From positions 124,001-188,000 of IMG/VR virus record IMGVR_UViG_3300042895_001344: DNA of 64,000 nt; one strand, 5' to 3'. This document shows positions 225-63,533 of the stretch, piece by piece. The position numbers and the translations under genes were made by a program. Each line of letters begins with the position of its first letter. Within the stretch, counting starts at the first letter, position 1. The notes beneath the pieces were generated by a model that ran no database searches, was not told the DNA's origin, and saw nothing but the letters and a program-made list of their open reading frames with translations.

Positions 225-232
225 TATAAATA
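225..232 (-). promoter_or_regulatory. Late motif TATTTATA
   Basis: Upstream of ATG 207. Confidence 0.65.
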
Positions 233-250
233 TCCCAAGTTTTATTAATA

Positions 251-3200
251 TTACACTTTCTCCAATTTAAAATAAACAATATCACCATCTTGTAAATCTA
301 AATCTTTCATCAATTTAGGTGATAGAGCAATTCCATATTCTTTTTCATCCCTAATATTGTCAATTGGACCTATAGCTATTGGTTTAGTTTTATCTGAACT
401 ATCTTGATGATTTACTGTTATATTTTTATTTTTATTTGGATTTAGGAAAAGTGTTTTATAATCTGTTAATGTTTCATTAACATCCATTTTATCTAAAATA
501 AATCTGGTTGAATAGAAATAATTTTTATCACTAAATTGTCTAATATTACCCCAAGTAAACGCTGGATCTTGTTTAAAATTAGATTTAGTTATTAAAGACA
601 TACTGTCCGTATCGTTCATCGAATAATTTGATTCTCCCATTCTAACCACCTGTGCTCTTAACCATTTATCACCTTTATATTCAACTTGAACAATATATCT
701 AAATTCATTAAATCCATTATATGGTATTCCATTTACGGTTACTCCCACATCGTCTAAAGTAACCTTTTCTCCCGGTACTTTCTTTTTATCAGGACCCATA
801 TCATATGTGTATTGACTACCGTCGGCAGTTACAATTGATGCACTTGTTTCCGTAACTTTATCTGAACCATTAACCCTATTGATCGCCTTTTGTTGTAGTT
901 TATCAAATAATGTTCTATAACTTGACATAAATGAATCTGTCAAATCAGGTAATGCTGTATATGGCATTCTCGATCCTTTAAATTTGGTTACAATATTATT
1001 ATTCCTAATTTCATGACCAACTTCAGTTATCCAATATGTTCCTTTAAACATAGGGATATTTTTCAAATAGAAAAACATCGTAGGTTGTATCATAACATTA
1101 CCCATACAAGTTATTTCACATGTGTATGCCGCTTGTCTATAATACTCATATAAACCAATATCAACATTATGTGATGATGAACCCGATTCACTTCTAGCTA
1201 AGTTTTCTAATACGTAAAATGACTCTGTTGTATTTTTAATTGATGCCTGATCTAAACTAATACCTTTAAAAATACTTTGATTTTGATCTCCAAAACTTAC
1301 TTCAAATGCAACTACTTTATTTGTTTTAGATAAATCTCCCGTTTGAAATACTTTAGGTAAAGTAATCATAACTGGGTTATTATTAGTATTACCAATATTA
1401 AAACTATCGTCAGTAAATCTATATTTTTTATTATCTGACATGTCAGGTCTTGTCGAATTTTTACCTACATATTGTACTATAATTTTAGGTGATGATTCTT
1501 GATAATCAACTTCTAAGAATGTTCCAAATATATTTTGTGCTATTTTTTTGGATGGTGTTAATTTAGGTGTGTTTGAAAAATTTGTTCCATAGAAATTAAT
1601 ATAAGCTGGTAATGCTCTTAGATCAAAACCTGTATCTTGTAATAATATTGATATTGAACTGAATAAATTTTGTTTAATGTTTTCGGGTTCTCCTAAATTG
1701 AGTAATCGTGATATGTCTATAAAATATTCATTGCCTATGTCTTTATTAGCCTTATCTAAAAATAAAAACTCTTCTAAAAGTGACCTTTGACCTATAGAAT
1801 TTCCTGCAATCCATTTATCGTTCATAGATTTAAAGAAATTATATAACTCAACCTTTAATGGTTTATTATTATAACCATCAAAAAAATCTATTTTACTTTT
1901 AGATTCTTCAATATTAAAAGATGAAAATTGAGGTATCAAAGTACTAAAGAATAATGACATTCTATTATTTAGACCTGTATTATTTTCACTATTAAAAATA
2001 ATATTTTTATATAGATATTGTTGGAATGTATATTTGTCTCGTGTTCCACCATTTTTTATATATCCCGCGTAAATGTATATTAATGATCTAAACATTAATA
2101 CGTTTGATTCATTTAATTTAACATTATTATCTTTAAAGAAATCTAAATATTCATTATCTAAATATTCATTATTTAAAGACGTTCCAGTTACATACGGTCC
2201 TACATATAATTGAATATATTTTGTGTCTCCCGATTGTGCGGTCAAATCGTAAGTATCGTATTTAAATTTATCTGTTTTATTAATGTCAATAAAACCATTA
2301 ATTACATGTGGGTCTAACTCTTTTGGGTTTCCAATTGTTATATTTATTAAATCATTATTTGATAATAATGAAGTTGTAATTGTTTTTAACTTTTCAGATT
2401 GTTTCTTTTTTAAATTCTGAATTTGAGTATCAATGTTATCAGAATCACTATTTTTATCATATGAAAGGTTTACTATGTCTCTTAATACTTCTTGAAACTT
2501 ACCATATTTTGTTAAACTAAACGATTTATCAGAATAATTTAAATTAACTTTTTCAGATGCGAAGTTTAAAAAGTGAGTTTCAAAATCTTCTAACATTTGT
2601 GGATTAAAAGTCGCAATTAAATCAAATACCTTTTTATTGTTACTACTTAAATTATAAAAATTACCTATTGTTCTGTTATATTCTTCCGGTGAGAAAAATG
2701 TCTTACCACTATATGTGTTATTAATATATTCATCTTCCCAAATAATTCTAAAATTATTTTGTTCTTCTAACGCAAAAGAATTATCACTAAATGGTGTGTC
2801 ATTATTTACTAATGATTGTTTTTTACCGTGATGTAAGTTACCACCTGTGGACGGTAATAAAGTATATCCATTATTTCCATTATTAACATATTGTGTCCAA
2901 TAATTAATTTTGTTGGTTCCTCTACTATCGTATTTTTTTAATTTTAATTTTCCATTTGTAATTGCGGTTGTATAATTTTCAGTGGCACCACTTAAATATA
3001 TGAAGAAACTATCGTTGTTTACTACATTATAAAAAATATTATCATAATAAGGATGTATACCAACATCACTATAACCACTAGTGTCACCTGTATATCTAAC
3101 AGGTTGAGTCCCTCCTGAATTAGTAAAAAATGTTAAGTTATTTTGATTATCAAAAAATCTACTTCCATTTATATTTGTCGTTGTAAATCCCGTTACACCA

Positions 3201-6085: not shown

Positions 6086-6398
6086 AATATAGATTATACA
6101 ATTCTACACCTCTTTTATAATCTTGTAAAGAGCTAATTAATGGGTACGGTATTCTTATGAAGAAATTATCTGGTATATCAAATTCTAAACTTCCCGCCTG
6201 TGGATTTGCTAACATAATTAACCATCCAAAAGTGGGTCCACCATAATATTCTTGTGACATTTTATCTAATCTGTCTTTACCTTTCTTAAATAAAATATAC
6301 TTATCCGTTCCTTTAATTGGGATTTCAATTCCCGGTACAATTCTAAATGTACCATCATCTATAAAAAACTGATACCTATCAAAATAATCCCTACTCAT
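6072..6398 (-). CDS. LysM-like baseplate wedge protein (T4 gp53 / P2 gpX-like)
   Basis: DRLDKMSQEYYGGPTFGWLIMLANP...IRIP motif; 108 aa; position in baseplate operon. Confidence 0.75.
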   Translation of the reverse strand: MSRDYFDRYQFFIDDGTFRIVPGIEIPIKGTDKYILFKKGKDRLDKMSQEYYGGPTFGWLIMLANPQAGSLEFDIPDNFFIRIPYPLISSLQDYKRGVELYNLYYGEK

Positions 6399-9300
6399 TT
6401 TCTATAATAGTTTAATTTATCTGTCACATTATTTGATGATCCGAATAACTTTTTAACTTCATCTATAGTTACCACATCTTCTGGAGATTCTCCCATTGGT
6501 TCCAAATCAATCTTAATTTGTTTGTCATTTTTACGAACCGGATCTTTACTAAATTTAATATTAATTTCTGATGGTTGGTATAGTGATTGATTTAATTTTT
6601 TAGTTATTCTATCCAAAAGATCATTATCCGTTGTAGATAAAGTAGTTCCTATTTTACTAACTATAGATGATTTATCATCGTAAAATAATACTCTTATAAT
6701 ATCTTCAGCAATTTCAAATGTATATTGTATATTTAAAAAGTTAATTGAAGTATCTAATTTAGAATACATCTTTTCGGTATTCTTTTTTATATGTTCAATA
6801 CAATCACTATAATTTGAATAGAAGCTTACTTTTCTTTGTTCATCTGTTGTTCCGTCTAATTTATATATATTCTTTGTTACTTTTTCTTTTTCAATTTTAA
6901 CATCTCTAGCGTATTTTGTAATAAAATTAACATTATCAATAGATTTAATTAATTCATTTCTATTATTTTCAAAATCTGTAATATTTTTAAATGTTGATAA
7001 ATCAATCATTTTTGATGGTATTTGTTCTATCACATACGAGTGTAGAACATTAGCAACATCATCTTTTATATTTAATGGAATGGTGTCCTCAAGTTTCAAT
7101 ATCTTTAAAATATAATACTTATCTGATAAGAAGTTAAGGTCATTTAAATAAGTTTTTAACGAATCGGCGGTGTGATTACATAGTGAAGGTAAACTAGAAT
7201 TATTAGGATATAATCCAAATAAATTTAAAGTTGTTGCAGCTCCGCCGGTTTCCACATCATAAACATTTATTTTACGATAATCTTTATTAAAAACTAAATT
7301 TGTTAAATGTTTACCATATTTTGTTAGAGTACTATTATAAAAACTTTCATATGAGACAAAATATTGACTTGTATTTTTATAAAGATTATCAATAACGGTC
7401 GTATAATCTAATGCTGATCCATCTATCAAAGCACCAATATATTGTCCTTCAGATACGTTATTTTTACTAGGACTATCTTTTAATAATGTTGGTGGAAATA
7501 ATTTATTATTTAAACCTTGTATGAATTCTTTTGTAAATTCATTTGCATCCATACCTCCTATTTTTGTACTAGTTGATTCAGATCTTTCATCATACATTTC
7601 GGTATTTGCATAGAAATTAGATGATAATGCGTTTTGTAATCTTTCGATAGGTCTTTCTAAACCTTGTCCACCTAAGAAATTCAATTGTATTGTGACAGTT
7701 GCAATCATAGGTTGTATTCCAATACCTTCAGAATTCAAATCCCATACGTTTTCTTCAAATTGAATATTAAGATCTCTAATCACAACTTTTGAATTATAGA
7801 AATCACCAACTCTCATTACACAAACAGGTGGAGGTCCAAATGTTGTATTTCTCGCATTTATATCGGAATCATCAGATGATCCTTTTATTGGTATTGTGTT
7901 GCCCGGTCTTAAACATTGTTGTAAAAACGTCAATCGTGAGTTCAAACCTTCAGGAGTCATTGAGTGAAATCCAGGATGAAAATATCTTAATTTTTCTTTT
8001 AATGAACTATAAATCATTGGAGACGTTTCTTCTAATTTCTTAAAATAAAACTCTTCAGATAATGTTTTCATTATGATTTTTTTCATCAAATCAATAGGTG
8101 GTTTAGTTTTGTTAGTACTAACATTACCCGTAGGTGACATTCTTATACTAGACACGTTTGAAGGTCCATCTACATTCGTTTTAGTATCATAATCGATTGA
8201 TACAGTAGATTGTCTACATCCATATGATAATGGTGAAAATTTGTTTAAATTTGGAGTCTCGTACGTTACTTTACCACAGTCAACATTATCTACATTTTTT
8301 TGCTTTCCATAATTAATTGTTCTAAAAATTATAGACTTATCTAAACCATCAAAACCTAAATCTTTATTCAAGGTATAATCAACTTCAATTGGGAATACTT
8401 CAAATCCTGGTGAAAACTCTTTCGATGTTACGTTTTTAAACTCCCATTTATCTTTTACATTTGATTTTAATGTTTCAATAACATATCTAACAATAGAATG
8501 TGATCTTCTCATAGATAAGTTATAATCACTAACATCATCTCCTGTAGCTGAAGTTGTAGATCCAATTAAAATAACAATATCGCTATTTATATTTTTATTT
8601 TCTATATTTGTTTTTAATTTTTCAATTGCAGTTTTAAAACTATTAAAGTTTGTTTCTTGATTTTCAAAAACTTTTAACAAATCATCTTTAACATTTTGAA
8701 TTGATTGTGTTGATTCTGGTCCACTTATATTATCTTTTCCAAATACATTAACTAAATCTTTTTTATCGTTTTGACTAATAATAGTGATTAATGCGGTCTC
8801 TAATCTAGCTAATGCAGTTTGTTGACTTGTTGTTCCACTTAAACTTTGGGCAATATCATTATAATTCTGAATTGATTTAAAACTTGTTCCACTATCACTA
8901 TCTGGATCTGAATTAGGGAATATTAATTTTACCTTTAATGATTCATTTTTCTTATTAGCGTCGTTTGTTGAACTTCCTTCAGGATTATTCCCCACTATAG
9001 TCGGAACAGCATCTTTTAATCGATTAATGTCATTTGGATTTTTATTGGTGTTTAAATAATTCTGTATTGCAGTAATATCATCTTCATTTAAATTTGCATA
9101 TGTTCTTATTAAACTATAAAAATCAATATCTTTTGCTCCCGCAAAAAATGAATTAATATAATCATCCGCCTGTTCGTCGTTTAAATTTTTAAAATGTTCT
9201 CTAACAAGTAAATTCATAATACTTGGGTGATCCACAACAATTTTAAAATTTAATGTTCCACTTCTTTCAGTATTTTGATATGTATAAATTGGTTCGGGTC

Positions 9301-11172: not shown

Positions 11173-11180
11173 TATAAATA
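11173..11180 (-). promoter_or_regulatory. Late motif TATTTATA
   Basis: Upstream of baseplate operon (11158). Confidence 0.75.
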
Positions 11181-13082: not shown

Positions 13083-13090
13083 TATAAATA
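13083..13090 (-). promoter_or_regulatory. Late motif TATTTATA
   Basis: 3 nt before tape measure ATG. Confidence 0.75.
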
Positions 13091-14076: not shown

Positions 14077-14565
14077 TTAGTATATCAAAATACATCTATC
14101 CATTCTCAAAGAACATGTAATATTAGCTAATTCATCTCTGTTATAGTCTAATTCACCAAAGTTCAAGTCAGTTAAGAAACAGTTTTCTAATAACCATTTT
14201 TCAACTACTACTCCTGTTGGGTCTAACATCTCCAATTCAATATCCTTTTTATAACCTGCAGCATAACCCATACGACCTGTTACAGATTCAGCATGTAAAC
14301 GGAACCATTCCATTAAAGCTTGAGAAGCTGAAGGTCCAATTGGATCTCTAAAAGTCATTTTAATTTCATTCCACTCAAATCTACCTGCAACATATGTTGA
14401 TGTGTTCAGGAAAGGAATTGCAACTGAATTGATTTTAGCACTTGGTCTTGACGCTGCAGATACATACCATTCGTTTATACCCAAAGATGAGTTGAATCTT
14501 ACGATAAATCGGTTGACCCTTTTTGGTTCGTAAGGTGTCGGCATTTTCATTAATAAATCGGCCAT
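14077..14565 (-). CDS. gp19: Tail tube protein
   Basis: YEPKRVNRF...GRFEWNEIKMTFRDPI...AAGYKKDIELEMLDPTGVVVEKW...FGELDY; directly after the sheath gene. Confidence 0.9.
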   Translation of the reverse strand: MADLLMKMPTPYEPKRVNRFIVRFNSSLGINEWYVSAASRPSAKINSVAIPFLNTSTYVAGRFEWNEIKMTFRDPIGPSASQALMEWFRLHAESVTGRMGYAAGYKKDIELEMLDPTGVVVEKWLLENCFLTDLNFGELDYNRDELANITCSLRMDRCILIY

Positions 14566-36232: not shown

Positions 36233-36237
36233 TATAA

Positions 36238-51657: not shown

Positions 51658-51665
51658 TATTTATA
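51658..51665 (+). promoter_or_regulatory. Late motif TATTTATA
   Basis: Upstream of operon 51670-54119. Confidence 0.75.
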
Positions 51666-51669: not shown

Positions 51670-52323
51670 ATGAAAGTAATTAAACTAAAAGAAAACGATC
51701 TTAGAAAATATATTGCTAAGATTATAAAGGAAAATCAATCAACCGAAAACTATATGTTTTTCAGTAATTTACAACAAATACATAGACAATGTGAGATGTT
51801 GATGAAAATGGATCCACAAGAGTTAGATCAAATTATTAAAAACGGTCACGATTGGGCGGACGATCATGTATCTGAAGCTAAGAACAATATGGATCAAGTT
51901 TTTGATTTCTTTATGAATGAAACTAAAAGTAAAGATAAACAAGATGTTACTGCCGATATGGATCAGTTTAGTATGAACGAAGAAGGACAACTTGACGAAA
52001 AATGTTGGGATGGGTATAAACAAGTTGGTAGTAAGAAAAAAGGTGGAAAAATGGTACCGAATTGTGTACCTGTAAGTGAAGCAAGTAGTCCTGCACAACA
52101 AGCTGCAATTGCAATCAATATGAAGAAAAAGGGTGTTGAACCTAAAAATGAGTCATACGGTGAAATAGACGAAAGTAAGAACTGTCCAACAGACCCTGCG
52201 AAGTGGGCAGCATCAAAGGCTAAAGCTAAATCTAAATTTGACGTCTATCCTTCAGCATATGCAAATGGATTCGCGGCGAAAGATTATAAAGCAAAAGGTG
52301 GTGGTTGGAGAAAATGTAAATAG
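51670..52323 (+). CDS. Modular basic protein (probable internal head protein)
   Basis: Leader MKVIKLKENDLRKYIAKIIKE; modules KCWDGYKQVG...PNCVP, SSPAQQAAIAI, CPTDPAKW...GGGW, each starting after xxE. Confidence 0.65.
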   Translation: MKVIKLKENDLRKYIAKIIKENQSTENYMFFSNLQQIHRQCEMLMKMDPQELDQIIKNGHDWADDHVSEAKNNMDQVFDFFMNETKSKDKQDVTADMDQFSMNEEGQLDEKCWDGYKQVGSKKKGGKMVPNCVPVSEASSPAQQAAIAINMKKKGVEPKNESYGEIDESKNCPTDPAKWAASKAKAKSKFDVYPSAYANGFAAKDYKAKGGGWRKCK

Positions 52324-54119: not shown

Positions 54120-54416
54120 TTAAATTAATTTTTGATTAGATATAAAGTATACCCTATCGGACGCATAGAGACCTTTATAGGACGCCTCTTTCTTTTCCAC
54201 TAACTTACCCATCTGTATTAAATGAAGACCGTTTTTAAGGTCTATTCCCACTAATAAACGACCTTGCCACTTTTCGTAGGTTGTTTCACGCACATATTTT
54301 CCCTCATCGTCCATTTTGAGGTGTTCAATCATCACTTCTTTTTTAATTTTACACGTAATCCCCCTCTCATCTATGAGTTTGGTTAAGACGTCTAATCGTA
54401 GATTTTCGTATTCCAT
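54120..54416 (-). CDS. Small protein with SAP/HeH-like N-terminus, host-type promoter
   Basis: YENLRLDVLTKLIDERGI...KEVMIEHL pattern; TATATTTG at 54421-54428 on the minus strand. Confidence 0.55.
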   Translation of the reverse strand: MEYENLRLDVLTKLIDERGITCKIKKEVMIEHLKMDDEGKYVRETTYEKWQGRLLVGIDLKNGLHLIQMGKLVEKKEASYKGLYASDRVYFISNQKLI

Positions 54417-54450: not shown

Positions 54451-54484
54451 AAAATAAAAAACCCCCGATTTCTCGAGGGTTTTT
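54451..54484 (-). terminator. Intrinsic terminator after major capsid gene
   Basis: AAAAACCCTCGA-GAAA-TCGGGGGTTTTT then T-tract on the minus strand. Confidence 0.85.
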
Positions 54485-54503
54485 CGTGATATTCCTATTA
54501 AGA

Positions 54504-56261
54504 TTATCTTAATGTATCTAAACCAAACACTTGGATACCTTGTACATCGATTACACCGAAGTAACGGTTGTTCACCATTTTCTTTGCGTAACGTGTCATG
54601 ATACCTTTGATTGGAGTCATGTTGAATGGATTGTACATTGTAGGAGTTAATTGTAATGGCACATATGGTGCGTATACATAACCTGCATCTAACAATGATT
54701 TTCCTTTATGACCGATCAAGATTTTGTTAGCTGGGAAGTAAGGATCACGATACACTTGGTAACGACCACCTACTGTACCGATTTTCTCGATACCCATGTT
54801 ATATTGATCTTGTTCTGGTTCTGCGTTAGAAACGTGGAAATACTCTAAATCATCGAATACTGCAGAAACTTCTGAAGAAACAACGATCCAGTTAGCACCA
54901 CCTCTTAACGTAGTTTTGTGGATTTGAGCAGAAATTTGGTTGATTTTTGTAACCAAAGTTTGGTTCCAATCTTTTTGAGTGTAACCTTGTAAAGTTGAGT
55001 TTCCAGATCCACCGTATTTCCATCCATTGTAATCCCATTTAGCTTTCCATGCTGCACCTTTACGTAAGTCACGTAAGATTTCACGGTCAACCTCAGCAGC
55101 GATTTGCTCTGATAATAAAGCTGTCAATTCAGCTTCAGCGTCGATGTTGTGGAACGCACTAACATCTTGTGCTAATTCTGGAGACCAGCTAGCTCTTAAT
55201 TTTCTTTCAGTTACAGAAACTGTTACTGATTCTAAATCAAAAGATACTTCACCAATTTGATCTTCAAACTCCAAAGTATCGTACTTGCGATAAGAAGCGT
55301 TGAATTCTGTTCTTGCTAAAGTTGAACCTGTTACTTCGTAATCAGAAAAACCCGAAGTTGGGTCGTATTTTTGTAAATCTACTTGTACATAGATTTTACC
55401 GTCAGTATCACAAATATCGTAGAAATTTTGTGTTGCGTTAGTTGTTTTAGCACCGTATTCTACAATACCTTTACCGTACTTTTGAGTAACGATATTGATT
55501 GGTAATGAAGTACCTGTAGTTGCACCTAAGAAAGCTAATAAGTTAGCATCTGAAGTGAAAACTTGTAATGAAGCTAAGAATTCTTCAGAATCCATTTCAT
55601 TACCGTCTGGTCCTTTCAATTTACCTGCACCTGCAGATTCAAATCCTTCTAATTCTAAAATTACATAAGATTTAGTTGTACCGGTATTAATAGCAGATGT
55701 ACTTGTAGTAACTTCACCGTTAGAGAAAGTTGTGAAACCATTTACAGTTAATGCGCTAACAGAATAAGCACCTTTTGAATAATCAAAAAGACCTTGTTCT
55801 AAGTCGTCATTAGCTTCGTAGAAACGATCGTAAAGATTCTTAGCACCTGTATTATAACCTGCTGTTGCAGCGTCAGAGTTACCTGGCATACCGTAAGGAG
55901 AGTAATGACCGTTAGCGTCAGTTCTCTCTTGGATTTTAGGTACGAAGAAGAACAATTTACCGATTGGTAAGTTCATAGCTTGTACAGACACGATGTCGTT
56001 AGCTAATAATTTAGAGAATACACGACGAATGATAGGGAAAACTACAGTCTCGAAAGAACCAGACGCATCAGCTACTGCTGCTTCGTTGATTAAGTAAGAC
56101 GCTTGGTTTTCATACAATTGCGCGATGTTATCTTTTTGGTGACCACCAAGACCCTCTAAGAATCCTAATTCGTCCCATTTTTTAATGGTATCTTCTTTGA
56201 TAACTCTAAGGTGCTTAAGACCTATGTTACCAACCATACCGCTTTCTAATAATGCTCCCAT
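54504..56261 (-). CDS. gp23: Major capsid protein (T4 gp23-like)
   Basis: IVSVQAMNLPIG, ERKLRASWSPELAQD, AEAELTALLSEQIAAEVDREIL, DAGYVYAPYVPL, KGIMTRYA. Confidence 0.97.
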   Translation of the reverse strand: MGALLESGMVGNIGLKHLRVIKEDTIKKWDELGFLEGLGGHQKDNIAQLYENQASYLINEAAVADASGSFETVVFPIIRRVFSKLLANDIVSVQAMNLPIGKLFFFVPKIQERTDANGHYSPYGMPGNSDAATAGYNTGAKNLYDRFYEANDDLEQGLFDYSKGAYSVSALTVNGFTTFSNGEVTTSTSAINTGTTKSYVILELEGFESAGAGKLKGPDGNEMDSEEFLASLQVFTSDANLLAFLGATTGTSLPINIVTQKYGKGIVEYGAKTTNATQNFYDICDTDGKIYVQVDLQKYDPTSGFSDYEVTGSTLARTEFNASYRKYDTLEFEDQIGEVSFDLESVTVSVTERKLRASWSPELAQDVSAFHNIDAEAELTALLSEQIAAEVDREILRDLRKGAAWKAKWDYNGWKYGGSGNSTLQGYTQKDWNQTLVTKINQISAQIHKTTLRGGANWIVVSSEVSAVFDDLEYFHVSNAEPEQDQYNMGIEKIGTVGGRYQVYRDPYFPANKILIGHKGKSLLDAGYVYAPYVPLQLTPTMYNPFNMTPIKGIMTRYAKKMVNNRYFGVIDVQGIQVFGLDTLR

Positions 56262-56283: not shown

Positions 56284-57582
56284 TTATTTTATTTTTCTCA
56301 TCATTTCTTTAATTCTACTGAATTGAGGATTTTCATAAGCTTTTGACTCAGATAATACCTCTGTAGAAGAAGATGTTGATGGAGTGTTAGAGATTTTTTT
56401 CGCAACTGATTCGGTAACCGTAGTTTTTGAACCTAATTCAGTTTTGATTGTTGAGAATAAAGACTTAGCTTCATTCATAGTAGAAACTGTATCAAATCTC
56501 TTTAATATATTCAATTTCTCTTGTTTTGTAGTTGAATGTTCAGTAAACAAACGTGTAGCGTAAGCTAAGTTTGCATTGAATACTGCAACTTCATTTAGTT
56601 TATCCTTGAATAATACTAACGCCTTTTTATATTCAGCATTTTGTTTTTTCAATGTTTCAACTTGTTCGTTGATACCTGAACCCGCTTTGTACATTTTTTT
56701 AGATGGTAAACCAGCTCTTTTCATACCGTTCTTGTTTCCATGAGGGTTTGATTTTGTACGTGCAGCTTCTGTAGCTTCAACTTTTTTAGGTTCTTCAACC
56801 TCGTCTTCCTCGTCTAATTCGATTTCATAGATAGTTTCTTCGTCAGCTTCTAATTCGTCTTCAGCATCAACATCTTCCATATCGGTTTCTGTATCAACAT
56901 CAGATTCTAAATCAGAATCAACGTCTGTATCCATTCCACTCATATCAACGTCGGAATCAACGTCAGAATCAACATCTGTATCTAAGTCAGCTCCCATGTC
57001 CATTCCAGTATCAAGATCAGAATCTTCACTATCTAATTTGATAATGTATTCATTTTCTCCGTCACCGAATTCGACATTGTTACCGTCTTTTTTAACTACA
57101 ATACCATCTTCTGGTTTCATAGCCTTGAATACTTTAAGAACTTCATCGTCTGAAGCACCTGTCATATCCATAACGTCTTCATCATCCATTGAACCTTCGT
57201 CACTCATAGATTCCATATCAGTACCCATATCGGTACCCATGTCATCCATGTCAACATCAGTGTCAACATCCGAATCAACGTCATCTGTTGAGTCTAAGTT
57301 ATCGAGGTCTGTATCTGTATCAACATCTGTATCAACGTCTTCTTCAGATTCATCATCTGTGTCTTCGTCGTCAGCTGTTACATCTTGTTCTGCCTCTTCT
57401 TCAGGTTTAGCAACTTCTTCATCAGTTGTTGTTTCTTCCTCTTCTTCCAATGATTCTTTTAGCAAATCTTTAAGTTCTTCCTTCATTGTTGAAGCAAGTA
57501 TACCTTTTGCATTTTGCTTTACGGCCTCTTCAAGATTTTGTACTTGAAGTAACGCTTGTTCTAAAATTGATTTTTCGCTCAT
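56284..57582 (-). CDS. Prohead core scaffold protein with long acidic linker
   Basis: Between protease and MCP; helical ends, Asp-rich repeats, LNEVAVFNANL motif, many LxE sites. Confidence 0.8.
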   Translation of the reverse strand: MSEKSILEQALLQVQNLEEAVKQNAKGILASTMKEELKDLLKESLEEEEETTTDEEVAKPEEEAEQDVTADDEDTDDESEEDVDTDVDTDTDLDNLDSTDDVDSDVDTDVDMDDMGTDMGTDMESMSDEGSMDDEDVMDMTGASDDEVLKVFKAMKPEDGIVVKKDGNNVEFGDGENEYIIKLDSEDSDLDTGMDMGADLDTDVDSDVDSDVDMSGMDTDVDSDLESDVDTETDMEDVDAEDELEADEETIYEIELDEEDEVEEPKKVEATEAARTKSNPHGNKNGMKRAGLPSKKMYKAGSGINEQVETLKKQNAEYKKALVLFKDKLNEVAVFNANLAYATRLFTEHSTTKQEKLNILKRFDTVSTMNEAKSLFSTIKTELGSKTTVTESVAKKISNTPSTSSSTEVLSESKAYENPQFSRIKEMMRKIK

Positions 57583-57609: not shown

Positions 57610-57617
57610 TATAAATA
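57610..57617 (-). promoter_or_regulatory. Late motif TATTTATA
   Basis: Upstream of scaffold-MCP operon. Confidence 0.75.
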
Positions 57618-57671: not shown

Positions 57672-58355
57672 TTATTTAGATAGAAATGTATCTAAATTGC
57701 CCATAAGTTTAGACATTCTACTGTCAAGTGTTGGTTTCTTAATTTCCGCTTCTTGATATTGGTCTCTTTCTGATGGGTCTTTAAAAATATAAGCACCGGG
57801 AGTTGATGGTGATGATACTAAATCAAAACAAACTAATTCGAAATCATCTTGTACGATGTTTTCTCCTTTAACTTGTTTAAGTGATCCTACACCACGTGAA
57901 GAGATACCTAAAGTTGCCCCGTTCATTAATAACATCGCAGCTTGATCTCCTTTGGTTGAAACGATACCCATCTTCTTCCATCCAGGAGAAGTGAATAACT
58001 TGATTTTACCCATAAGGATTCTACCGTCCCACCAAGTTTCTAAAATTGAATGTGATACTCGATCTAAATCGATTAGTGAAGATGAAGGGTGATTTAATTC
58101 ATTTAATGCTCCACCCTTTTTAATTAGTGATTGATATTTTTCGTTTTCTCTCTTAAGTAACATTTCAGGATATATCCTTCCGTTCTTATTTGGAGTATCG
58201 AATTTTTGTAAAACAGCATAAAGGATTAGATCTTCAGAGAAGTCCACACCCTTCATTTCCTGTATAATTTTTTTATTCTCTTCTGGAGATACGTGTCCTG
58301 CGTCGTATTCTATTAAAATTCCTGTTCCAAGTTCTTTGGGTCCTAATATCTTCAT
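57672..58355 (-). CDS. gp21: Prohead maturation protease (gp21-like)
   Basis: PNKNGRIYP, ELNHP (His), LGISSRGVGS (Ser), FDLVSSPSTPGA. Confidence 0.95.
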   Translation of the reverse strand: MKILGPKELGTGILIEYDAGHVSPEENKKIIQEMKGVDFSEDLILYAVLQKFDTPNKNGRIYPEMLLKRENEKYQSLIKKGGALNELNHPSSSLIDLDRVSHSILETWWDGRILMGKIKLFTSPGWKKMGIVSTKGDQAAMLLMNGATLGISSRGVGSLKQVKGENIVQDDFELVCFDLVSSPSTPGAYIFKDPSERDQYQEAEIKKPTLDSRMSKLMGNLDTFLSK

Positions 58356-58371: not shown

Positions 58372-58379
58372 TATAAATA
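58372..58379 (-). promoter_or_regulatory. Late motif TATTTATA
   Basis: Upstream of protease. Confidence 0.75.
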
Positions 58380-58393: not shown

Positions 58394-58819
58394 TTATTTT
58401 TTGGATTTGTAGAAATTGAATAGATTTTTGTCAGAAAGTCCATCTTCTATTACCATAGATAGAATATCTTTTACGTTATTTTTAATTTCTTTTGATTTAA
58501 CGTCGAACTGTTTATCAACATATAATGTGATTTCTAAGTTCATAAAAGATCTTTTTTCTAATTTAATTCCCTTTGTTCTAATATCTAAATCAACAATAGA
58601 TTGTTGTTTAAAATAAGGGTTCTTAAGATTATAAATTATTTCTTTAACCTTTCGTCTTGATTTATGAATCATATGATCAAAATCATCAGTCTCATTTTCG
58701 GCTTGTACCCATGAGTTTAATTTCAAATAAATGGTTTTAAGATTCTTAAAATCTACGGTACCATAACCGATCTTTACATCATTGTAAATCCCTAATGGGA
58801 TATACTTACCTGTTTTCAT
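58394..58819 (-). CDS. Hypothetical protein (141 aa)
   Basis: Clean ORF in the head cluster, divergent from rpsU. Confidence 0.7.
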   Translation of the reverse strand: MKTGKYIPLGIYNDVKIGYGTVDFKNLKTIYLKLNSWVQAENETDDFDHMIHKSRRKVKEIIYNLKNPYFKQQSIVDLDIRTKGIKLEKRSFMNLEITLYVDKQFDVKSKEIKNNVKDILSMVIEDGLSDKNLFNFYKSKK

Positions 58820-58909: not shown

Positions 58910-58917
58910 TATTTATT
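58910..58917 (+). promoter_or_regulatory. Late motif TATTTATT
   Basis: 4 nt before rpsU ATG. Confidence 0.65.
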
Positions 58918-58921: not shown

Positions 58922-59113
58922 ATGATTATTATAGACTTATCTAAAGAAAAAAGTATTGAGACAGCGTTAAGAACTTATAAACAAAAAGTTCAAAAAACAA
59001 AGCAAGTTCAAAAATTGAGGGAAAGACAACAGTTCGTAAAACCTTCCGTTAAAAAAAGAACTGAAAAATTAAAAGCAGTTTATTTACAACAAAAAAGAAA
59101 TGGACTTAGTTAA
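58922..59113 (+). CDS. rpsU: Ribosomal protein bS21
   Basis: SIETALRTYKQKV...LRERQQFVKPSVKKR...KAVY matches bS21 (ALKRYKRK...FxKPS), Bacteroidota type. Confidence 0.92.
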   Translation: MIIIDLSKEKSIETALRTYKQKVQKTKQVQKLRERQQFVKPSVKKRTEKLKAVYLQQKRNGLS

Positions 59114-59843
59114 GTCCATTTTTTAATTCGTTTAATCTGTAGTAATTGTATCTCGACGGAAACATTTGATTTACTTCATCTTTAACAGCATTTAATTTAT
59201 TTATTAAATCCGTTTCATTTGATTCACTTAAAAGTGTTGATACTTGACTTACAATTGATTCTTTTAATTCAGTTGTTTTGGTGATGATCTCATCATAAGG
59301 AATAGATAAGATATTTTTTAATTCTTCTTTTTGTGATTCTGATAATGTATTAGAATAAAGAGCGTTAAAATTGTTTGTTAACACCGCATTTAATAAATTT
59401 TCATTTGGTATCAAGGTTGAATCTTTAGATTCTTTAATTTCTTTTTTGGTTGTTAAATGATTTACTAAATTCTTTTTTGCATTAACCTTCTTTTCAATAT
59501 TTGATAGACTATCTTTTTCAATTAAGATATCTAATGAATTGTATATTTCATTTTCATTAATTGCCTCTACGTTTATCATTTTATTTAATGATGTACAAAA
59601 TGTAGTTAAATCATCCATTTGTTGTTTTAAGATACTAATAACTCCCTCGACGTATAACTTTGCGGTTTCTTTATCGTCAATATATTTGTTTTCAATTTCT
59701 TCATAAAACAAATACATTTCTTTAAAATTTTTATTTTCTTTAATTGTTGTTAAAATATTTTTAATCTCACCTTTATTTTCATTGGTGTAAGATTCAGTTA
59801 ACTTGTTTAATAATTTGGTTTTAATGACCCCGAATTTGTTCAT
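59106..59843 (-). CDS. Helical prohead-core-type protein
   Basis: Directly after portal; helical, with LTE/LSE/LKE/LNE sites. Confidence 0.55.
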   Translation of the reverse strand: MNKFGVIKTKLLNKLTESYTNENKGEIKNILTTIKENKNFKEMYLFYEEIENKYIDDKETAKLYVEGVISILKQQMDDLTTFCTSLNKMINVEAINENEIYNSLDILIEKDSLSNIEKKVNAKKNLVNHLTTKKEIKESKDSTLIPNENLLNAVLTNNFNALYSNTLSESQKEELKNILSIPYDEIITKTTELKESIVSQVSTLLSESNETDLINKLNAVKDEVNQMFPSRYNYYRLNELKNGLN

Positions 59844-59845
59844 GT

Positions 59846-61687
59846 TTAATCGTTTAAGATATCATTTATTTTTGTCTCTATTTCATAAATATTCTGTTGA
59901 GCTTTTTCCATATCAAACAGAATATTAAAATCTTCTTTTTCTTCACCTAACATACCAAGTATTTTAGATTTTTTTGATTTTTTAGCTAATGTAGATTCAC
60001 TCAAAGGTTCCTCTCCTCCACCCGCTGGTGGCGGTGGTGCTCCACCTCCCATATCCATTCCTCCACCTCCCATATCCATTCCTCCACCCGCTTCTGCTCC
60101 TGCGGCTTCCATTGCCTTTTCTCTATCCTCTTCAGGAATACCATACTTAGCATCTACCTCATCAAATACACCTGAACGTTTAATAACATTCTGAGTATTC
60201 GTTAATTCAAATCCTAATGCACGTTCTAAACGTTGTTGTTGTAAGTCTAACATAACTTCACTATCACTAAATCCAAGGATATTTTTCTTAGCCCATGTAT
60301 GTGATACTGGTAAGATACCCACTTGAGATTGATCCGATGTTGCGTCTTTATAAAGTGTTACTTTTTCTTTCCATTGTTCAATACGTAATAAATCAGATTG
60401 TGCTGATGGGTTAGTTAATGATAATGAGAAATTATTTAATTCATCCTCCATACCTAAAAGGTATAATTGAATTAATGCAATTTTATTTAATTCTTGAATA
60501 ACAGATTTTTGAATTCTATTAATAGTTCTAGCAAAACGAATATCCATTAAAGCTAAACTCTTACCTTCACCGACAACTTCTTCAAATCCTAAGAACGCTT
60601 TAGGTATACGTAATGCGGCTAACATCTTCTTTTGAATGTATTCAATATCAGCAATCTCTCCTAAGTTTTGTGCTCCTGGTAATGTTTCAATTGGATTAGA
60701 TTGTGATGGATCACGAACAGGAATAAAATAATCCTGATCAACAGCCATTTGATTATATCTCATATCGACTTGACCGTTACGTGGATCTGAAATCTGATCT
60801 CTTTTAAATTTGTTTGCAACACGTTGTACGTAAGATTCAATATCCTTATCATCCATATTACCAACGAATACTTTGAATACACGTCTTTCAGGTGCTCTTG
60901 ATGTTCTATAGATTAACATGGCATCTTCAGCAAGTAAAAGTTGTTTCCAAATACGTCTAATTTTATCTAACATAGAAGTACCGTAAGGTAACTTTCTATC
61001 ATCACCTAATAATCTAAAGTGAGCAATTTCCCATGCTTGAAATTCCAAATCTTTGTTCTTCCATTGAAAACGTAATTCTCTTGATGGAACTTTTAAATCT
61101 CTATTTTGTGTTGTGGTCTTACCCGCGGCACCTTCAATTCTTTCAATTTCAATATTTGGTAATTGTTGACATCCGATGATACCTTTTTCGGGATCTAACT
61201 TTAAATAAACAAAGTTGTCACCATACTTACAAACACCTCTAGTCCACATTTGTAAGTTAGTATTAACGTCTAATCTGTTATTAAATAAATCTTCTAATAT
61301 TTCTTTAATTCTATCTGATTCAGAATAGATCGTTAAAATTTGACCCTTTTCAGACATTGTAGTGGATTCTTCCGCATATATGTCTAACGCTGCAGATATT
61401 TCAGGAGTAAACTCCATCGCCTCATAATCGTAATAAGCTGCTAATCTATTTGGTTCATAATAAACCGATTGGTTATAGAGAGATTGGTCTAATTTAGTCC
61501 ATTTATCAGCGATGTATTGACTCTGTTGAGCCTGTAACATTGCCTTATCATAATCTTCTTTGTTATCTGTTTTTAATAATTCATCTTTACTGAAATTAAA
61601 TGAAGGTGCCTGTGTTACCTGAGGTTTCCCTGGGTACCCAAACATCTTTGTTAATTTCTGAAATACAGTTAAATTTTGATTTGCCAT
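59846..61687 (-). CDS. gp20: Portal protein (T4 gp20-like)
   Basis: PEISAALDIYAEE, IAHFRL, PYGTSML, LLLAEDAMLIYRTSRAPERRVF, DYFIPVR, IETLPGAQNLGEIADIEY. Confidence 0.97.
   Translation of the reverse strand: MANQNLTVFQKLTKMFGYPGKPQVTQAPSFNFSKDELLKTDNKEDYDKAMLQAQQSQYIADKWTKLDQSLYNQSVYYEPNRLAAYYDYEAMEFTPEISAALDIYAEESTTMSEKGQILTIYSESDRIKEILEDLFNNRLDVNTNLQMWTRGVCKYGDNFVYLKLDPEKGIIGCQQLPNIEIERIEGAAGKTTTQNRDLKVPSRELRFQWKNKDLEFQAWEIAHFRLLGDDRKLPYGTSMLDKIRRIWKQLLLAEDAMLIYRTSRAPERRVFKVFVGNMDDKDIESYVQRVANKFKRDQISDPRNGQVDMRYNQMAVDQDYFIPVRDPSQSNPIETLPGAQNLGEIADIEYIQKKMLAALRIPKAFLGFEEVVGEGKSLALMDIRFARTINRIQKSVIQELNKIALIQLYLLGMEDELNNFSLSLTNPSAQSDLLRIEQWKEKVTLYKDATSDQSQVGILPVSHTWAKKNILGFSDSEVMLDLQQQRLERALGFELTNTQNVIKRSGVFDEVDAKYGIPEEDREKAMEAAGAEAGGGMDMGGGGMDMGGGAPPPPAGGGEEPLSESTLAKKSKKSKILGMLGEEKEDFNILFDMEKAQQNIYEIETKINDILND
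60040..60088. repeat. 21-bp tandem repeat in portal C-terminal tail
   Basis: CTCCACCTCCCATATCCATTC twice plus a partial copy; encodes GMDMGGG. Confidence 0.85.
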
Positions 61688-61691: not shown

Positions 61692-61699
61692 TATAAATA
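61692..61699 (-). promoter_or_regulatory. Late motif TATTTATA
   Basis: 4 nt before portal ATG. Confidence 0.75.
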
Positions 61700-61741: not shown

Positions 61742-63520
61742 TTATCTACGTTTACCAAATAACCAAGAATTCTCTTGATATGTTTGTTTACTGACATTCA
61801 TATTATTATCTCGATAATATAAATTATTATTATCCGTTCCCATTGAACCTATTTGATCAAATGCGGTACCATATGAATAGAATGATTTACTTGTCTCATA
61901 TGATCTTTCACTCATAGTCCAAGAATCTAACATTGCTTTGTTCGCATTTTCGTTCTTTTGTAATAAATTAAATGATACATCCGCAGCATATAAAGCCATT
62001 GACATACCCATAATAGCATCATCATGTGTTCCTTTCATATGATCAGGTCTACCGTTCATATAAACAAACGTGTTAAGTTCGTTTAATAATCTTGCAGATC
62101 TAACAATAAATCCTTTTCTAAGTTGTTCCTCAAATGCTGCAACAATTTGAGTTCTTTTGTTGTTAAAGTTAAGACCTGGTATTTTCTCCATCGCCTTAGC
62201 GTTATAGTCCCAAATGTTTTGAGTATTAACACCCTCAACGTATACGTTTTTGTAATTTAACTCAGTTAATTTTCTTGATGTTGCAACTCCCATTCCACCT
62301 GTAATATCCGTTACAATAAACGCATTACCATATAGGATAGCCCATTTGTATGCAACTGCCGCTAAGTCATCGGGAGGTATTTTACCAATATATTCTGCAA
62401 CCTGTTCCCTATCATCAAAATCTATAATTGATATAGCCGAAAAATCCTCACTATCTCCTCTACTAACATCCACACCCATAATATAACGATGACCAATTAT
62501 TGGTTCTTTCCATTGCCAAAACGTAGCCTGCATGTATTTTTCAATAGGTTCTCTAATCATGTTTTTAGCAATATTCTCTTGAATATCACCAGGGATAACA
62601 CCATCTCCCGAACCTAAGAAATCACATTCCAACTCCTGAGCAATTTTACGTCTATCGTATTTAAATTTCTTAGACATTGACTCAAACCACGAAGAAAATG
62701 GTTTATAACCATCCTCTAAAAGTTTGTTATATTCTTTCATATCAAAATCATGTAAAACAACTTCATCGTCATTATATTGTTCTCTATTCAACATGTAATG
62801 ACAGATGTCCTGACATTTAACCCAATGTAAATCTTTGGTGTAACGAGGGTCTTTAAACCACCTTAAATCTGTTATATGGAAATCATTGATTCCACGTAAT
62901 GCTTGGTCGTAAACACCGTAATAGATAGGGTCATAACCATTTGGAGTGGAGATAAGAATAATCTTACCACCCGTTGATAGGGACGCCATAGATGCTGCCC
63001 AAAAATCATCACCTGCTTCAATATATGCTGCCTCATCAAATACAAGTATGGTAGGTGTATAACCACGAAGGGCATCCGCTGAAGTTGCAACCGCCTTAAC
63101 CTCACAACCATTATTTAATCTAAATCTACTCTCTGAGTTTTTATCAGGTGAGAACCCAACATTTAACCATTCAGGCCATTGTTCCAAGAAGTGTCTAACC
63201 TTATTAGCCATCTCCACCGCAGTATCACGTTTGTTTGCAATAAGTAGAACTCTCTCAGGATTATCGGGTTTTGCTAATTGTAATTTTTTTGATAACCATG
63301 CGGCCGTTACTGTTGTTACACCCGCCTGTCTATATTTTCTTGTAATGTTTTCGTTGTAATCTTCGTAGTCCTTTATTAGTTGAATTTGATCTTCAAACAG
63401 GTCCATTGGGACATACTTCTTCTGTGTATTATCGAATGTTTGTAAATACGTTCTAAGTGCATACGGAGTATCTTTTATAATCTTTGCATACTCAATTAAT
63501 TGTTCCGTTCTGGTATTCAT
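61742..63520 (-). CDS. terL: Terminase large subunit
   Basis: RQAGVTT (Walker A variant), LVFDEAA (Walker B), ISTPNG, MGVDVSRG, HDD. Confidence 0.95.
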   Translation of the reverse strand: MNTRTEQLIEYAKIIKDTPYALRTYLQTFDNTQKKYVPMDLFEDQIQLIKDYEDYNENITRKYRQAGVTTVTAAWLSKKLQLAKPDNPERVLLIANKRDTAVEMANKVRHFLEQWPEWLNVGFSPDKNSESRFRLNNGCEVKAVATSADALRGYTPTILVFDEAAYIEAGDDFWAASMASLSTGGKIILISTPNGYDPIYYGVYDQALRGINDFHITDLRWFKDPRYTKDLHWVKCQDICHYMLNREQYNDDEVVLHDFDMKEYNKLLEDGYKPFSSWFESMSKKFKYDRRKIAQELECDFLGSGDGVIPGDIQENIAKNMIREPIEKYMQATFWQWKEPIIGHRYIMGVDVSRGDSEDFSAISIIDFDDREQVAEYIGKIPPDDLAAVAYKWAILYGNAFIVTDITGGMGVATSRKLTELNYKNVYVEGVNTQNIWDYNAKAMEKIPGLNFNNKRTQIVAAFEEQLRKGFIVRSARLLNELNTFVYMNGRPDHMKGTHDDAIMGMSMALYAADVSFNLLQKNENANKAMLDSWTMSERSYETSKSFYSYGTAFDQIGSMGTDNNNLYYRDNNMNVSKQTYQENSWLFGKRR

Positions 63521-63525
63521 ATATG

Positions 63526-63533
63526 TATAAATA
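63526..63533 (-). promoter_or_regulatory. Late motif TATTTATA
   Basis: 5 nt before terL ATG, just after a terminator. Confidence 0.75.

What the first reader, a model, noticed from the sequence alone, without database searches (positions are those of the whole stretch)
225..63533. Late regulon marked by TATTTAT(A/T), the reverse complement of the T4 late promoter
Seen: about 23 copies on the coding strand, 3 to about 40 nt upstream of starts of terL, portal, protease, scaffold, neck, sheath, tube, tape measure, baseplate, fibres, phoH and rpsU, on both strands. It is absent from the immediate upstream regions of polB, the helicase, the 39618 glycosyltransferase, the HAD-like gene and 54120..54416, which have TAnnTTT-like host elements. 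A gp55-like sigma is encoded at 45460..46161. Known: T4 gp55 reads TATAAATA on the coding strand. Inference: a different late promoter specificity. The 3-5 nt spacing to several ATGs implies leaderless mRNAs, initiation inside the motif, or a role at RNA level as a translation enhancer.
Basis: partly seen in the sequence, partly recalled or inferred. Interest (0 to 1): 0.7.

Follow-up and report, generated by a model that had tools for sequence, protein, structure and literature searches.

The report
Variant T4-type late promoter, TATTTATA
A freshwater giant phage of Bacteroidota marks about 22 gene starts in this window, mostly virion genes, with a single short promoter box, TATTTAT(A/T), a two-letter variant of phage T4's late promoter that is probably read by the phage's own gp55-like sigma factor and often sits so close to the ATG that the mRNAs should have no leader.

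Summary
The window has 41 copies against 39.7 expected. However, 20 of 54 genes carry TATTTAT[AT] on the coding strand within 50 nt of the start, against 2.1±1.45 in shuffles. Two re-assigned starts bring this to 22 sites. The T4-orientation TATAAATA is not enriched.

The box is the top upstream 8-mer in the whole 217-kb record and in a complete 310-kb relative. It is kept in 38/38 scaffold, 36/36 protease, 30/31 portal and 16/16 terL upstream regions of relatives. It also precedes late operons in a cultured Flavobacterium phage.

It is a single element with no -35 box. It often follows terminators and lies outside the abundant scaffold+capsid RNA.

ORF 45460..46161 is a sigma region-2 protein whose best sequence and fold matches are T4 gp55.

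The "reverse complement" framing misleads. Read in the same orientation, TATTTATA differs from TATAAATA only at positions 4-5 and keeps both deep-pocket adenines.

Spacing to the ATG peaks at 3-6 nt, and long leaders have an A peak at +4 to +6. This suggests leaderless late mRNAs, but no transcription start site is mapped.

A second, RpoD-like sigma outside the window is the main rival reader. I class this as a new variant of a known kind.

The parts
45460..46161 (+). gp55-like sigma (233 aa): a sigma region-2 domain plus a roughly 95-aa C-terminal helical domain. It is the proposed reader of the motif.
   Evidence: phrog_234 late sigma, E=1e-4 and 5e-6. Best PDB sequence hit is T4 gp55 7d7c_F, E=9e-4. 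Best fold hit is 7d7d_F, Z=10.7. Sigma70_r2 is hit by 18 of 53 family members. The model has pLDDT 92.
225..232 (-). TATTTATA, 17 nt before the ATG at 207 (small ORF 4..207)
11173..11180 (-). TATTTATA, 14 nt before the 1587-aa gene 6395..11158
13083..13090 (-). TATTTATA, 3 nt before the ATG of 11199..13079 (626 aa); short class
14605..14612 (-). TATTTATT, 39 nt before the tail tube gene 14077..14565
17909..17916 (-). TATTTATA, 37 nt before the tail sheath gene 14887..17871
19924..19931 (-). TATTTATT, 5 nt before the ATG of 19406..19918; short class
21923..21930 (+). TATTTATA, 15 nt before 21946..23061 (head-tail adaptor-like)
26407..26414 (-). TATTTATA, 4 nt before the ATG of 26046..26402; short class
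29645..29652 (-). TATTTATA, 21 nt before 27344..29623 (759 aa)
32675..32682 (-). TATTTATA, 7 nt before 29689..32667 (992 aa)
36238..36245 (-). TATTTATA, 5 nt before an in-frame ATG at 36232 of gene 34505..36253. That ATG is the probable true start.
   Evidence: sequence read
36263..36270 (+). TATTTATA, 15 nt before 36286..37035
38985..38992 (+). TATTTATT, 3 nt before the ATG of 38996..39565; short class
41954..41961 (+). TATTTATA, 32 nt before the TTG start of phoH 41994..42725
46165..46172 (+). TATTTATT, 3 nt before the ATG of 46176..46556, directly after the sigma gene. The same arrangement occurs in Flavobacterium phage immuto.
50214..50221 (+). TATTTATA, 11 nt before 50233..51654
51658..51665 (+). 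TATTTATA, 4 nt before the ATG of 51670..52323; short class
57610..57617 (-). TATTTATA, 27 nt before the scaffold-position gene 56284..57582. It heads the scaffold + gp23 capsid (54504..56261) transcription unit.
   Evidence: Kept in 38 of 38 relatives. RNA depth falls from about 250-390 to about 0-6 at roughly 57600. No RNA contig reaches the box. Contig L119 spans the unit.
54456..54485 (-). Intrinsic terminator that closes the scaffold+capsid unit
58372..58379 (-). TATTTATA, 16 nt before the prohead protease gene 57672..58355
   Evidence: kept in 36 of 36 relatives
58910..58917 (+). TATTTATT, 4 nt before the ATG of rpsU (bS21) 58922..59113, just downstream of a conserved host-type TATATTTG
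   Evidence: 22 of 36 relatives keep the late box
61692..61699 (-). TATTTATA, 4 nt before the ATG of the portal gene 59846..61687; short class
   Evidence: 30 of 31 relatives keep it, with spacing 3-6 nt
63526..63533 (-). TATTTATA, 5 nt before the ATG of terL 61742..63520, directly after terminator 63539-63564
   Evidence: 16 of 16 relatives keep it, with spacing 3-6 nt, and the terminator stem differs between relatives while staying paired

Best explanation
(V)TATTTAT(A/T) is the late promoter of a T4-related giant phage of freshwater Bacteroidota, one of the 'bS21 phages'. It is a single, -10-like element with no -35 partner.

After early genes have been transcribed from host-type TAnnTTTG promoters, host core RNA polymerase carrying the phage's gp55-like sigma (45460..46161) melts the box. 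Transcription then starts at an A some 4 to 6 nt downstream.

Read in the same orientation as T4's TATAAATA, the box differs only at positions 4-5 (T4 -10 and -9, AA changed to TT). It keeps the two adenines that gp55 buries in deep pockets (-12 and -8).

About 45% of the boxes lie 3-6 nt from an ATG, so those promoter-proximal genes (terL, portal, rpsU and others) would be made as leaderless mRNAs. The remaining genes have A-rich leaders of about 5-55 nt.

What is shown: positional enrichment, strand bias, conservation in relatives, the lack of a -35 box, the transcription-unit boundaries for scaffold+capsid, and the sigma homology.

What is inferred: which sigma reads the box, the exact start site, leaderless translation, and 'late' timing.
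For: Enrichment. In the window, 20 of 54 genes carry the box against 2.1±1.45 expected. In the genome it is 29 against 4.0±2.0, and it is the top upstream 8-mer. The reverse orientation is not enriched.

Conservation while flanks diverge. Scaffold 38/38; protease 36/36, portal 30/31, terL 16/16, capsid 0/40 because it is co-transcribed.

Complete relative G002 (sigma 74% identical). The box occurs 35 times against 2.8 expected and shows the same 3-6 nt spacing peak. There are no late boxes in the 200-260 kb block of small genes, which holds 37 host-type TAnnTTTG boxes.

Cultured Flavobacterium phage immuto. Its gp55-like protein is 27% identical, and no Sigma70_r2 match at all (so no RpoD-like sigma) was found in its record. 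TATTTAT[AT] precedes four operons in its baseplate/tail-fibre region, including the gene directly after the sigma.

Architecture. In 96 sites, no upstream column is informative except a non-T at -1. In long leaders, A occurs at +4/+5/+6 in 33, 35 and 37 of 47 sites. In the short class, the A of the ATG falls at +4 to +6 in 32 of 43 sites.

Terminator then box.

RNA. Depth over scaffold+capsid is about 250-390 and falls to about 0-6 beyond roughly 57600. The box is at 57610-57617. In four further RNA runs, contigs end at 57566-57584 and nothing covers 57585-57740.

Sigma. In the alignment with T4 gp55, gp55 pocket residues Y97, R57, F86 and L54 match Y92, R53, F81 and I50. H95 (A-9 pocket) is Y90 and T99 (A-8 pocket) is G94. 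Pocket roles are from PMC7892883.

No phage RNA polymerase was found in G000, G001 or G002.

Geometry from the literature. The T4 element spans -13 to -6 (PMC1524935). In Flavobacterium the -7 box lies 4-5 nt from the start site (PMC6847099).
Against: No start site is mapped at nucleotide resolution. In RNA libraries, contigs of diverged relatives run 28-47 nt upstream of the scaffold ATG, into or past the box. Two assembled contigs start inside the box's last 1-4 nt. I cannot tell whether these are RNA ends, DNA, read-through, or assembly breaks at a conserved/variable junction.

Homology of the sigma to gp55 is weak by sequence (E about 1e-3). A family profile scores cyanobacterial SigA region 2 (E=0.0017) above gp55 (E=0.055). 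The protein also has an extra C-terminal domain with weak sigma-4-like matches.

No gp45 clamp was found with PF09116 (G000 only) or PF02916 (G000 and complete G001). gp33 was not searched for.

A second, RpoD-like sigma is encoded in G000, G001 and G002.

Several genes behind the box are not classical late genes (phoH and unknown ORFs). Timing itself was not measured.

Leaderless mRNAs are only about 5% in Flavobacterium (PMC9723704).
Confidence: 0.65

Rival explanations
1. The box is a promoter, but it is read by the phage's other sigma. That is the RpoD-like 269-aa protein with regions 2 and 4 (G000:81314-82123, outside the window), or a modified host sigma-A. The gp55-like protein would then have another role.
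For: The second sigma is a clear Sigma70_r2 + r4 protein. It is conserved in the complete relatives G001 and G002. TATTTATA also resembles the host -7 box TAHHTTTG, differing only at positions 6 and 8 (PMC6847099).
Against: A sigma with region 4 usually needs a -35 box, and none is seen in 96 sites. Phage immuto uses the same box before late operons and has the gp55-like gene, but no Sigma70_r2 match at E<=0.1 in its whole record. The box keeps the two deep-pocket adenines of the gp55 element.
Confidence: 0.15
2. The box acts in the RNA. It would be a translation enhancer that replaces the missing Shine-Dalgarno sequence, or an RNase processing site, within long read-through transcripts.
For: Many copies lie 3-6 nt from the AUG. 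Bacteroidota do not use Shine-Dalgarno sequences (PMC6847099). Some RNA-library contigs of relatives include the box.
Against: Spacing ranges from 3 to 60 nt. The box sits directly after intrinsic terminators. The abundant scaffold+capsid RNA of this strain stops short of it, and the upstream gene's 3' end is not covered. Internal genes of operons, such as the capsid gene, lack it in 0 of 40 relatives. It is related to two known DNA promoter elements.
Confidence: 0.06
3. Transcription starts inside the box, which would act as an initiator-type promoter for an unrecognised polymerase or factor. The short class would then have leaders of 4-9 nt and would not be leaderless.
For: Contig ends fall at the last 1-4 nt of the box in two assemblies. 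RNA-library contigs of relatives end 28-34 nt upstream of the ATG.
Against: No single-subunit or multisubunit polymerase gene was found in the window's record or in two complete relatives. Sigma-directed polymerase cannot start inside its -10 element. The origin of those contigs (RNA or DNA) is unknown, and strain-junction assembly breaks could explain their ends. The A peak at +4 to +6 points downstream of the box.
Confidence: 0.07
4. The motif is a chance product of AT-rich intergenic DNA.
For: The whole-window count is at expectation: 41 against 39.7.
Against: There is about a tenfold positional excess over shuffles of the same upstream regions, with strand bias. The box is perfectly conserved in orthologous regions whose flanks diverge.
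Confidence: 0.01

Closest known systems
Phage T4 late promoter TATAAATA (-13 to -6), read by gp55 with gp33 and the gp45 clamp
   Same: It is a single 8-bp AT-rich -10-like element without a -35 box, placed in front of virion genes. A gp55-like sigma is encoded. Six of eight positions are identical in the same orientation, including the adenines at T4 positions -12 and -8. The distance to the inferred start site is similar.
   Different: Positions 4-5 are TT instead of AA, and TATAAATA itself is not enriched here. The sigma has an extra C-terminal domain. No gp45 was found and gp33 was not searched for. The host is Bacteroidota. Many promoters abut the ATG.
Late-promoter variants in other T4-like phages (WATAAATA in RB49, KVP40 and S-PM2; CTAAATA in Aeh1; PMC1524935)
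   Same: They are precedents for drift in late-promoter sequence together with drift in gp55.
   Different: All of those variants keep the AAATA core. Here the core itself is changed to TTATA.
Bacteroidota sigma-A promoter, -33 TTTG / -7 TAnnTTTG (TAHHTTTG)
   Same: The box has the same length and the same inferred position (-12 to -5). It shares T-12, A-11, T-8 and T-6, and has a 4-5 nt gap to the start site. The phage also uses true host-type boxes, for example before 54120..54416 and upstream of rpsU.
   Different: It has A instead of T at -7 and A instead of G at -5, two nearly invariant host positions. It marks a different, mutually exclusive gene set in the complete relative.
bS21-encoding freshwater phages of Bacteroidetes (Chen et al. 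2022, PMC9723584)
   Same: The gene order is the same (terL, portal, reverse-strand bS21, protease, capsid) and the habitat is the same. Their RNA profiles group the capsid gene with its upstream gene, which matches the box positions found here.
   Different: A term search of that paper's main text found no occurrence of promoter, motif, sigma or leaderless.
Leaderless-mRNA promoters of Actinobacteria and Deinococcus (a -10 box a few nt before the ATG; from my own knowledge)
   Same: A -10-like box at a fixed short distance from an ATG that opens a long ORF.
   Different: Those are a host-wide habit. Here the feature is a phage regulon in a phylum where leaderless mRNAs are about 5% of the total (PMC9723704).

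Membership tests
T4-type (gp55-dependent) late promoter | A single -10-like element with no -35 element | tested here: met
   In 96 sites from two genomes, no upstream column is informative except a non-T at -1.
T4-type (gp55-dependent) late promoter | Consensus TATAAATA (core AAATA) on the non-template strand | tested here: not met
   TATAAATA occurs at 6 genes against 5.6 expected in the genome, and WATAAATA at 5 against 4.1 in the window. The enriched word is TATTTATA.
T4-type (gp55-dependent) late promoter | Placed upstream of virion (late) genes and absent from replication genes | tested here: met
   Present before terL, portal, protease, scaffold+capsid, sheath, tube and adaptor. Absent before polB, helicase, dUTPase and the glycosyltransferases. 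phoH is an exception.
T4-type (gp55-dependent) late promoter | The phage encodes a gp55 homologue | tested here: met
   phrog_234. Best PDB sequence hit is gp55, E=9e-4. Best fold hit is gp55, Z=10.7. The homology is weak and the protein has an extra C-terminal domain.
T4-type (gp55-dependent) late promoter | Co-activator gp33 and sliding clamp gp45 are encoded | tested here: inconclusive
   PF09116 found nothing in G000, and PF02916 found nothing in G000 or in the complete relative G001. Divergent clamps could be missed, and gp33 was not searched for.
T4-type (gp55-dependent) late promoter | Start site about 6 nt after the element; late timing; dependence on the sigma | not testable with these tools
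   Only contig-level RNA evidence is available. The A peak at +4 to +6 is indirect.
Bacteroidota sigma-A -7/-33 promoter | TAHHTTTG with nearly invariant T-7 and G-5 | tested here: not met
   The box has A at both of those positions in all sites by definition. True TAnnTTTG boxes form a separate set.
Leaderless mRNA | The primary transcript begins at, or within a few nt of, the A of the AUG | tested here: inconclusive
   Spacing of 3-6 nt occurs in 37 of 96 sites and is conserved for portal and terL. This fits the 4-5 nt box-to-start distance, but no 5' ends are mapped.

The most novel reading that the evidence does not exclude
A very abundant group of freshwater Bacteroidota jumbo phages has re-tuned a gp55-type sigma to a new core (TATTTATA). 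It expresses close to half of its late transcription units as leaderless mRNAs, in a phylum where these are rare. It also encodes its own ribosomal protein bS21, driven from a host-type box plus a late box. If phage bS21 biases ribosomes towards these leaderless or A-rich-leader late mRNAs, this would be a coupled transcription-translation takeover. The sigma's extra C-terminal domain could stand in for the gp33/clamp co-activation used by T4.
Probability: 0.3. Interest if true: 0.75.

Novelty: new variant of a known kind. Interest (0 to 1): 0.6.

Why it matters
The motif supplies a transcription map for a widespread, mostly uncultured phage group whose late gene expression and bS21 have so far only been described from metatranscriptomes.

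It shows how far gp55-type promoter recognition can drift. The core changes while the bases corresponding to T4's deep-pocket adenines stay. It also points to specific residues to test, namely those aligned with gp55 H95 and T99.

It raises a directly testable idea: that late mRNAs are leaderless in a Shine-Dalgarno-free host.

A cultured relative, Flavobacterium phage immuto on strain LMO8, carries the same box, so experiments are feasible.

The box is also a practical marker for calling start codons and operons in these genomes. Two starts in this window look mis-called.

Tried and rejected
- A whole-window count of the motif is uninformative: 41 against 39.7.
- Megablast of 24 kb against GenBank phages found nothing.
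- Sigma-70-type promoters are not enriched: 90 against 104.
- In G000, host-type TAnnTTTG within 50 nt of starts is not significant (10 against 6.4). It becomes clear only in the complete relative.
- Fine RNA mapping. Both read-laying runs returned assembled contigs without strand or read ends. They set bounds on the transcript but give no start site.
- The metagenome pattern scan returned four contigs that begin 9-31 nt before the scaffold ATG, but I cannot tell RNA from DNA assemblies.
- The profile search against PDB did not sharpen the gp55 assignment: SigA region 2 scored slightly better.
- Foldseek gave only low-TM whole-sigma matches. The wide VIA search was more useful.
- Searches for the gp45 clamp (PF09116, PF02916) and for phage RNA polymerases were negative.
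- A literature search for TATTTATA as a phage promoter, and for late promoters of Flavobacterium phages, found nothing relevant.
- I did not run complex prediction. No protein-binding claim depends on it.

Full report
**What the window is**

The window is bases 124001-188000 of a single 217,142-bp viral contig with 31.6% G+C. CheckV estimates the record at about 65% complete.

Its genes are T4-like:
- gp23-family capsid (54504..56261)
- a 432-aa gene in the scaffold position (56284..57582)
- S77 prohead protease (57672..58355)
- T4-type portal (59846..61687)
- terL (61742..63520)
- sheath (14887..17871) and tube (14077..14565)
- polB, helicase, phoH, dUTPase and glycosyltransferases
- a reverse-strand ribosomal protein S21 gene (58922..59113)

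The gene order and the freshwater source match the 'bS21 phages' of Bacteroidetes described by Chen et al. 2022. A term search of that paper's main text found no occurrence of promoter, motif or sigma (PMC9723584).

Counted over the whole window, the motif is at expectation: 41 against 39.7. The signal lies in where the copies sit.
- In the window, 20 of 54 genes have TATTTAT[AT] on the coding strand within 50 nt of the start. Dinucleotide shuffles of those same regions give 2.1±1.45, with a maximum of 7. The reverse complement occurs at 5 genes against 4.1 expected.
- Two more sites appear when starts are re-assigned: 225-232(-) before an ATG at 207, and 36238-36245(-) before an in-frame ATG at 36232 (sequence). 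That makes 22 sites.
- In the whole record, TATTTATA is the most enriched upstream 8-mer. It occurs at 29 genes against 4.0±2.0 in shuffles, while TATAAATA occurs at 6 against 5.6.

**Conservation in relatives**

The scaffold-position protein has hundreds of relatives in IMG/VR. In distinct upstream regions of orthologues at 41-100% amino-acid identity, the box is kept as follows:

| Gene | Regions with the box | Spacing to ATG |
|---|---|---|
| scaffold | 38 of 38 | 24-28 nt |
| protease | 36 of 36 | mostly 15-17 nt |
| portal | 30 of 31 | 3-6 nt |
| terL | 16 of 16 | 3-6 nt |
| capsid | 0 of 40 | none; follows the scaffold gene directly |

The flanks diverge while the box stays. Upstream of terL, the box always follows a terminator whose stem differs between relatives while staying paired.

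In a complete 310-kb relative (G002, sigma 74% identical), the box is again among the top two upstream 8-mers: 35 against 2.8 expected. The spacing profile is the same. The box is absent from the 200-260 kb block of small genes, which instead holds 37 host-type TAnnTTTG boxes.

The cultured Flavobacterium phage vB_FspM_immuto has a homologue of the sigma at only 27% identity. It carries TATTTAT[AT] before four operons in its baseplate/tail-fibre region, including the gene directly after the sigma gene. The window has the same arrangement.

**Anatomy of the box**

Across 96 sites from two genomes, the only informative columns are the box itself and a non-T at -1. There is no -35-like column.

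Spacing to the ATG has a sharp peak at 3-6 nt (37 of 96 sites) and a broad tail out to 60 nt.

In long-leader sites, positions +4, +5 and +6 after the box are A in 33, 35 and 37 of 47 cases. In the short class, the A of the ATG falls at +4 to +6 in 32 of 43 cases. Both classes therefore place an A where a sigma-directed start would be expected.

The geometry fits published values. The T4 late element spans -13 to -6 (PMC1524935). The Flavobacterium -7 box lies 4-5 nt from the start site (PMC6847099). Host-type boxes in G002 show the same two-peak pattern: exactly 4 nt, and 18-20 nt.

**RNA evidence**

Lake metatranscriptome assemblies hold this phage and many relatives.
- Depth over scaffold+capsid is in the hundreds. 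It falls to about 0-6 in the bin that starts at 57601. In run X1, that residue is fully explained by one low-depth contig that begins at 57608.
- In four other RNA runs, contigs of this strain end at 57566-57584, and nothing covers 57585-57740.
- The box (57610-57617) is therefore upstream of the abundant RNA, and the unit is not a read-through from the protease gene.
- One assembled contig runs from 9 nt before the scaffold ATG to 17 nt after the capsid stop, just before the terminator at 54456-54485.

Caveats. These are assembled contigs without strand or read ends. Contigs of diverged relatives reach 28-47 nt upstream of their ATG. Two assemblies start within the last 1-4 nt of the box. The start site is therefore bounded but not mapped.

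**Who reads the box?**

ORF 45460..46161 (233 aa) has these matches:
- the PHROG 'late sigma' family, E=1e-4 and 5e-6
- T4 gp55 as its best PDB sequence match, E=9e-4 over residues 24-141
- Sigma70_r2 weakly, in 18 of 53 family members
- in a confident model (pLDDT 92), T4 gp55 in the clamp-activated complex as best fold match, Z=10.7 with 117 residues aligned, followed by other region-2 domains

A family profile does not favour gp55 over SigA region 2. Residues from about 137 to 233 form an extra helical domain with weak sigma-4-like matches.

No phage RNA polymerase was found in this record or in two complete relatives. Host polymerase plus a phage sigma is therefore the likely machinery.

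A second sigma exists outside the window. It is RpoD-like, with regions 2 and 4, and is also present in G001 and G002. It is the main rival reader.

Three points count against that rival:
- The box has no -35 partner.
- No Sigma70_r2 match was found in the whole immuto record, although immuto uses the box.
- The box resembles the gp55 element.

**Re-reading the 'reverse complement'**

TATAAATA and TATTTATA are reverse complements. Because the frame TAT..ATA is palindromic, they also differ only at positions 4-5 when read in the same direction.

In the T4 open complex, gp55 flips the non-template bases A-12, A-9 and A-8 into pockets. Y97 stacks on A-12, N13 and H95 touch A-9, and T99 bonds A-8 (PMC7892883). 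In that register, TATTTATA keeps A-12 and A-8 and changes -10 and -9.

In the HMMER alignment, gp55 residues Y97, R57, F86 and L54 align with Y92, R53, F81 and I50, which are conserved in the family. H95 aligns with Y90 and T99 with G94. That is suggestive of altered reading at the changed positions. It rests on a 19%-identity alignment and is inference only.

The box is also two substitutions away from the host -7 consensus TAHHTTTG, at positions 6 and 8.

**Verdict**

The motif is a real, conserved, strand-specific, single-element promoter. It marks the virion-gene regulon, plus a few other genes, of a large group of Bacteroidota phages.

My confidence, step by step:
- It is a promoter: about 0.85.
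- It is read by the gp55-like sigma: about 0.65.
- The 3-6 nt class gives leaderless mRNAs: about 0.55.

In Flavobacterium only about 5% of mRNAs are leaderless (PMC9723704), so a phage regulon with roughly 40% would be notable. I found no description of this box in the literature held here. It is best classed as a new variant of the T4-type late promoter system.

Noticed in passing
G000:C1:81314-82123 (-), outside the window (L086:1060-1869): A second phage sigma of 269 aa, RpoD-like, with Sigma70 regions 2 and 4. It is also present in the complete relatives G001 and G002. No Sigma70_r2 match was found in Flavobacterium phage immuto. It may serve a middle class of promoters. A late box lies at its 3' end, 13 nt before the next gene.
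   Followed up: partly
window 54417-54455 (upstream of 54120..54416, - strand): A clean host-type Bacteroidota promoter, TTTG-N20-TATATTTG, lies only 4 nt from the ATG. It is conserved in most of the 23 distinct relatives' upstream regions examined. This gene would be leaderless under host sigma-A. In G002, seven host-type boxes sit exactly 4 nt from an ATG.
   Followed up: partly
window 58890-58921 (upstream of rpsU/bS21, + strand): bS21 has tandem boxes: a host-type TATATTTG 17 nt from the ATG, seen in most relatives' upstream regions, and a late box 4 nt from the ATG, kept in only 22 of 36. This suggests both early and late expression.
   Followed up: partly
window 34135-34142: This is the one clear opposite-orientation case. 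TATAAATA (the T4 form) lies on the coding (-) strand, 3 nt before the ATG of the collagen-like fibre gene 32710..34131.
   Followed up: no
window 36232 and 207: Two start codons look mis-assigned by longest-ORF calling. Gene 34505..36253 probably starts at 36232, 5 nt after a late box. ORF 4..288 probably starts at 207, 17 nt after a late box and clear of the upstream gene's stop.
   Followed up: partly
window 14566-14886: The 320-nt sheath-tube spacer holds three TATTTATT copies on the - strand (14605, 14733, 14751). The two upstream copies have no obvious ORF behind them. They may mark a small ORF or a non-coding RNA.
   Followed up: no
window 59884-59891 (-), inside the portal gene's 3' end: TATTTATG lies 40 nt before 59106..59843 and is kept in 37 of 37 relatives, even where the neighbouring codons change. 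It may be an internal late promoter.
   Followed up: partly
window about 58820-58870 (upstream of 58394..58819, - strand): A different conserved word, ACACCATAA(A/G), sits about 25 nt before the ATG in the relatives printed. There is no late box and no clear host box there. Its function is unknown.
   Followed up: no
window 45460..46161, residues about 137-233: The gp55-like sigma has a well-predicted extra C-terminal helical domain with weak sigma-4-like fold matches. The family is very large: 1284 representatives at 50% clustering and more than 7900 sequences.
   Followed up: partly
L140 (Flavobacterium phage immuto, record 50-77 kb): The block of small early genes in immuto repeats other upstream words (TATCAATAATTAAAAC-like and TATATTTAG). 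This may be a distinct early-promoter or leader module.
   Followed up: no
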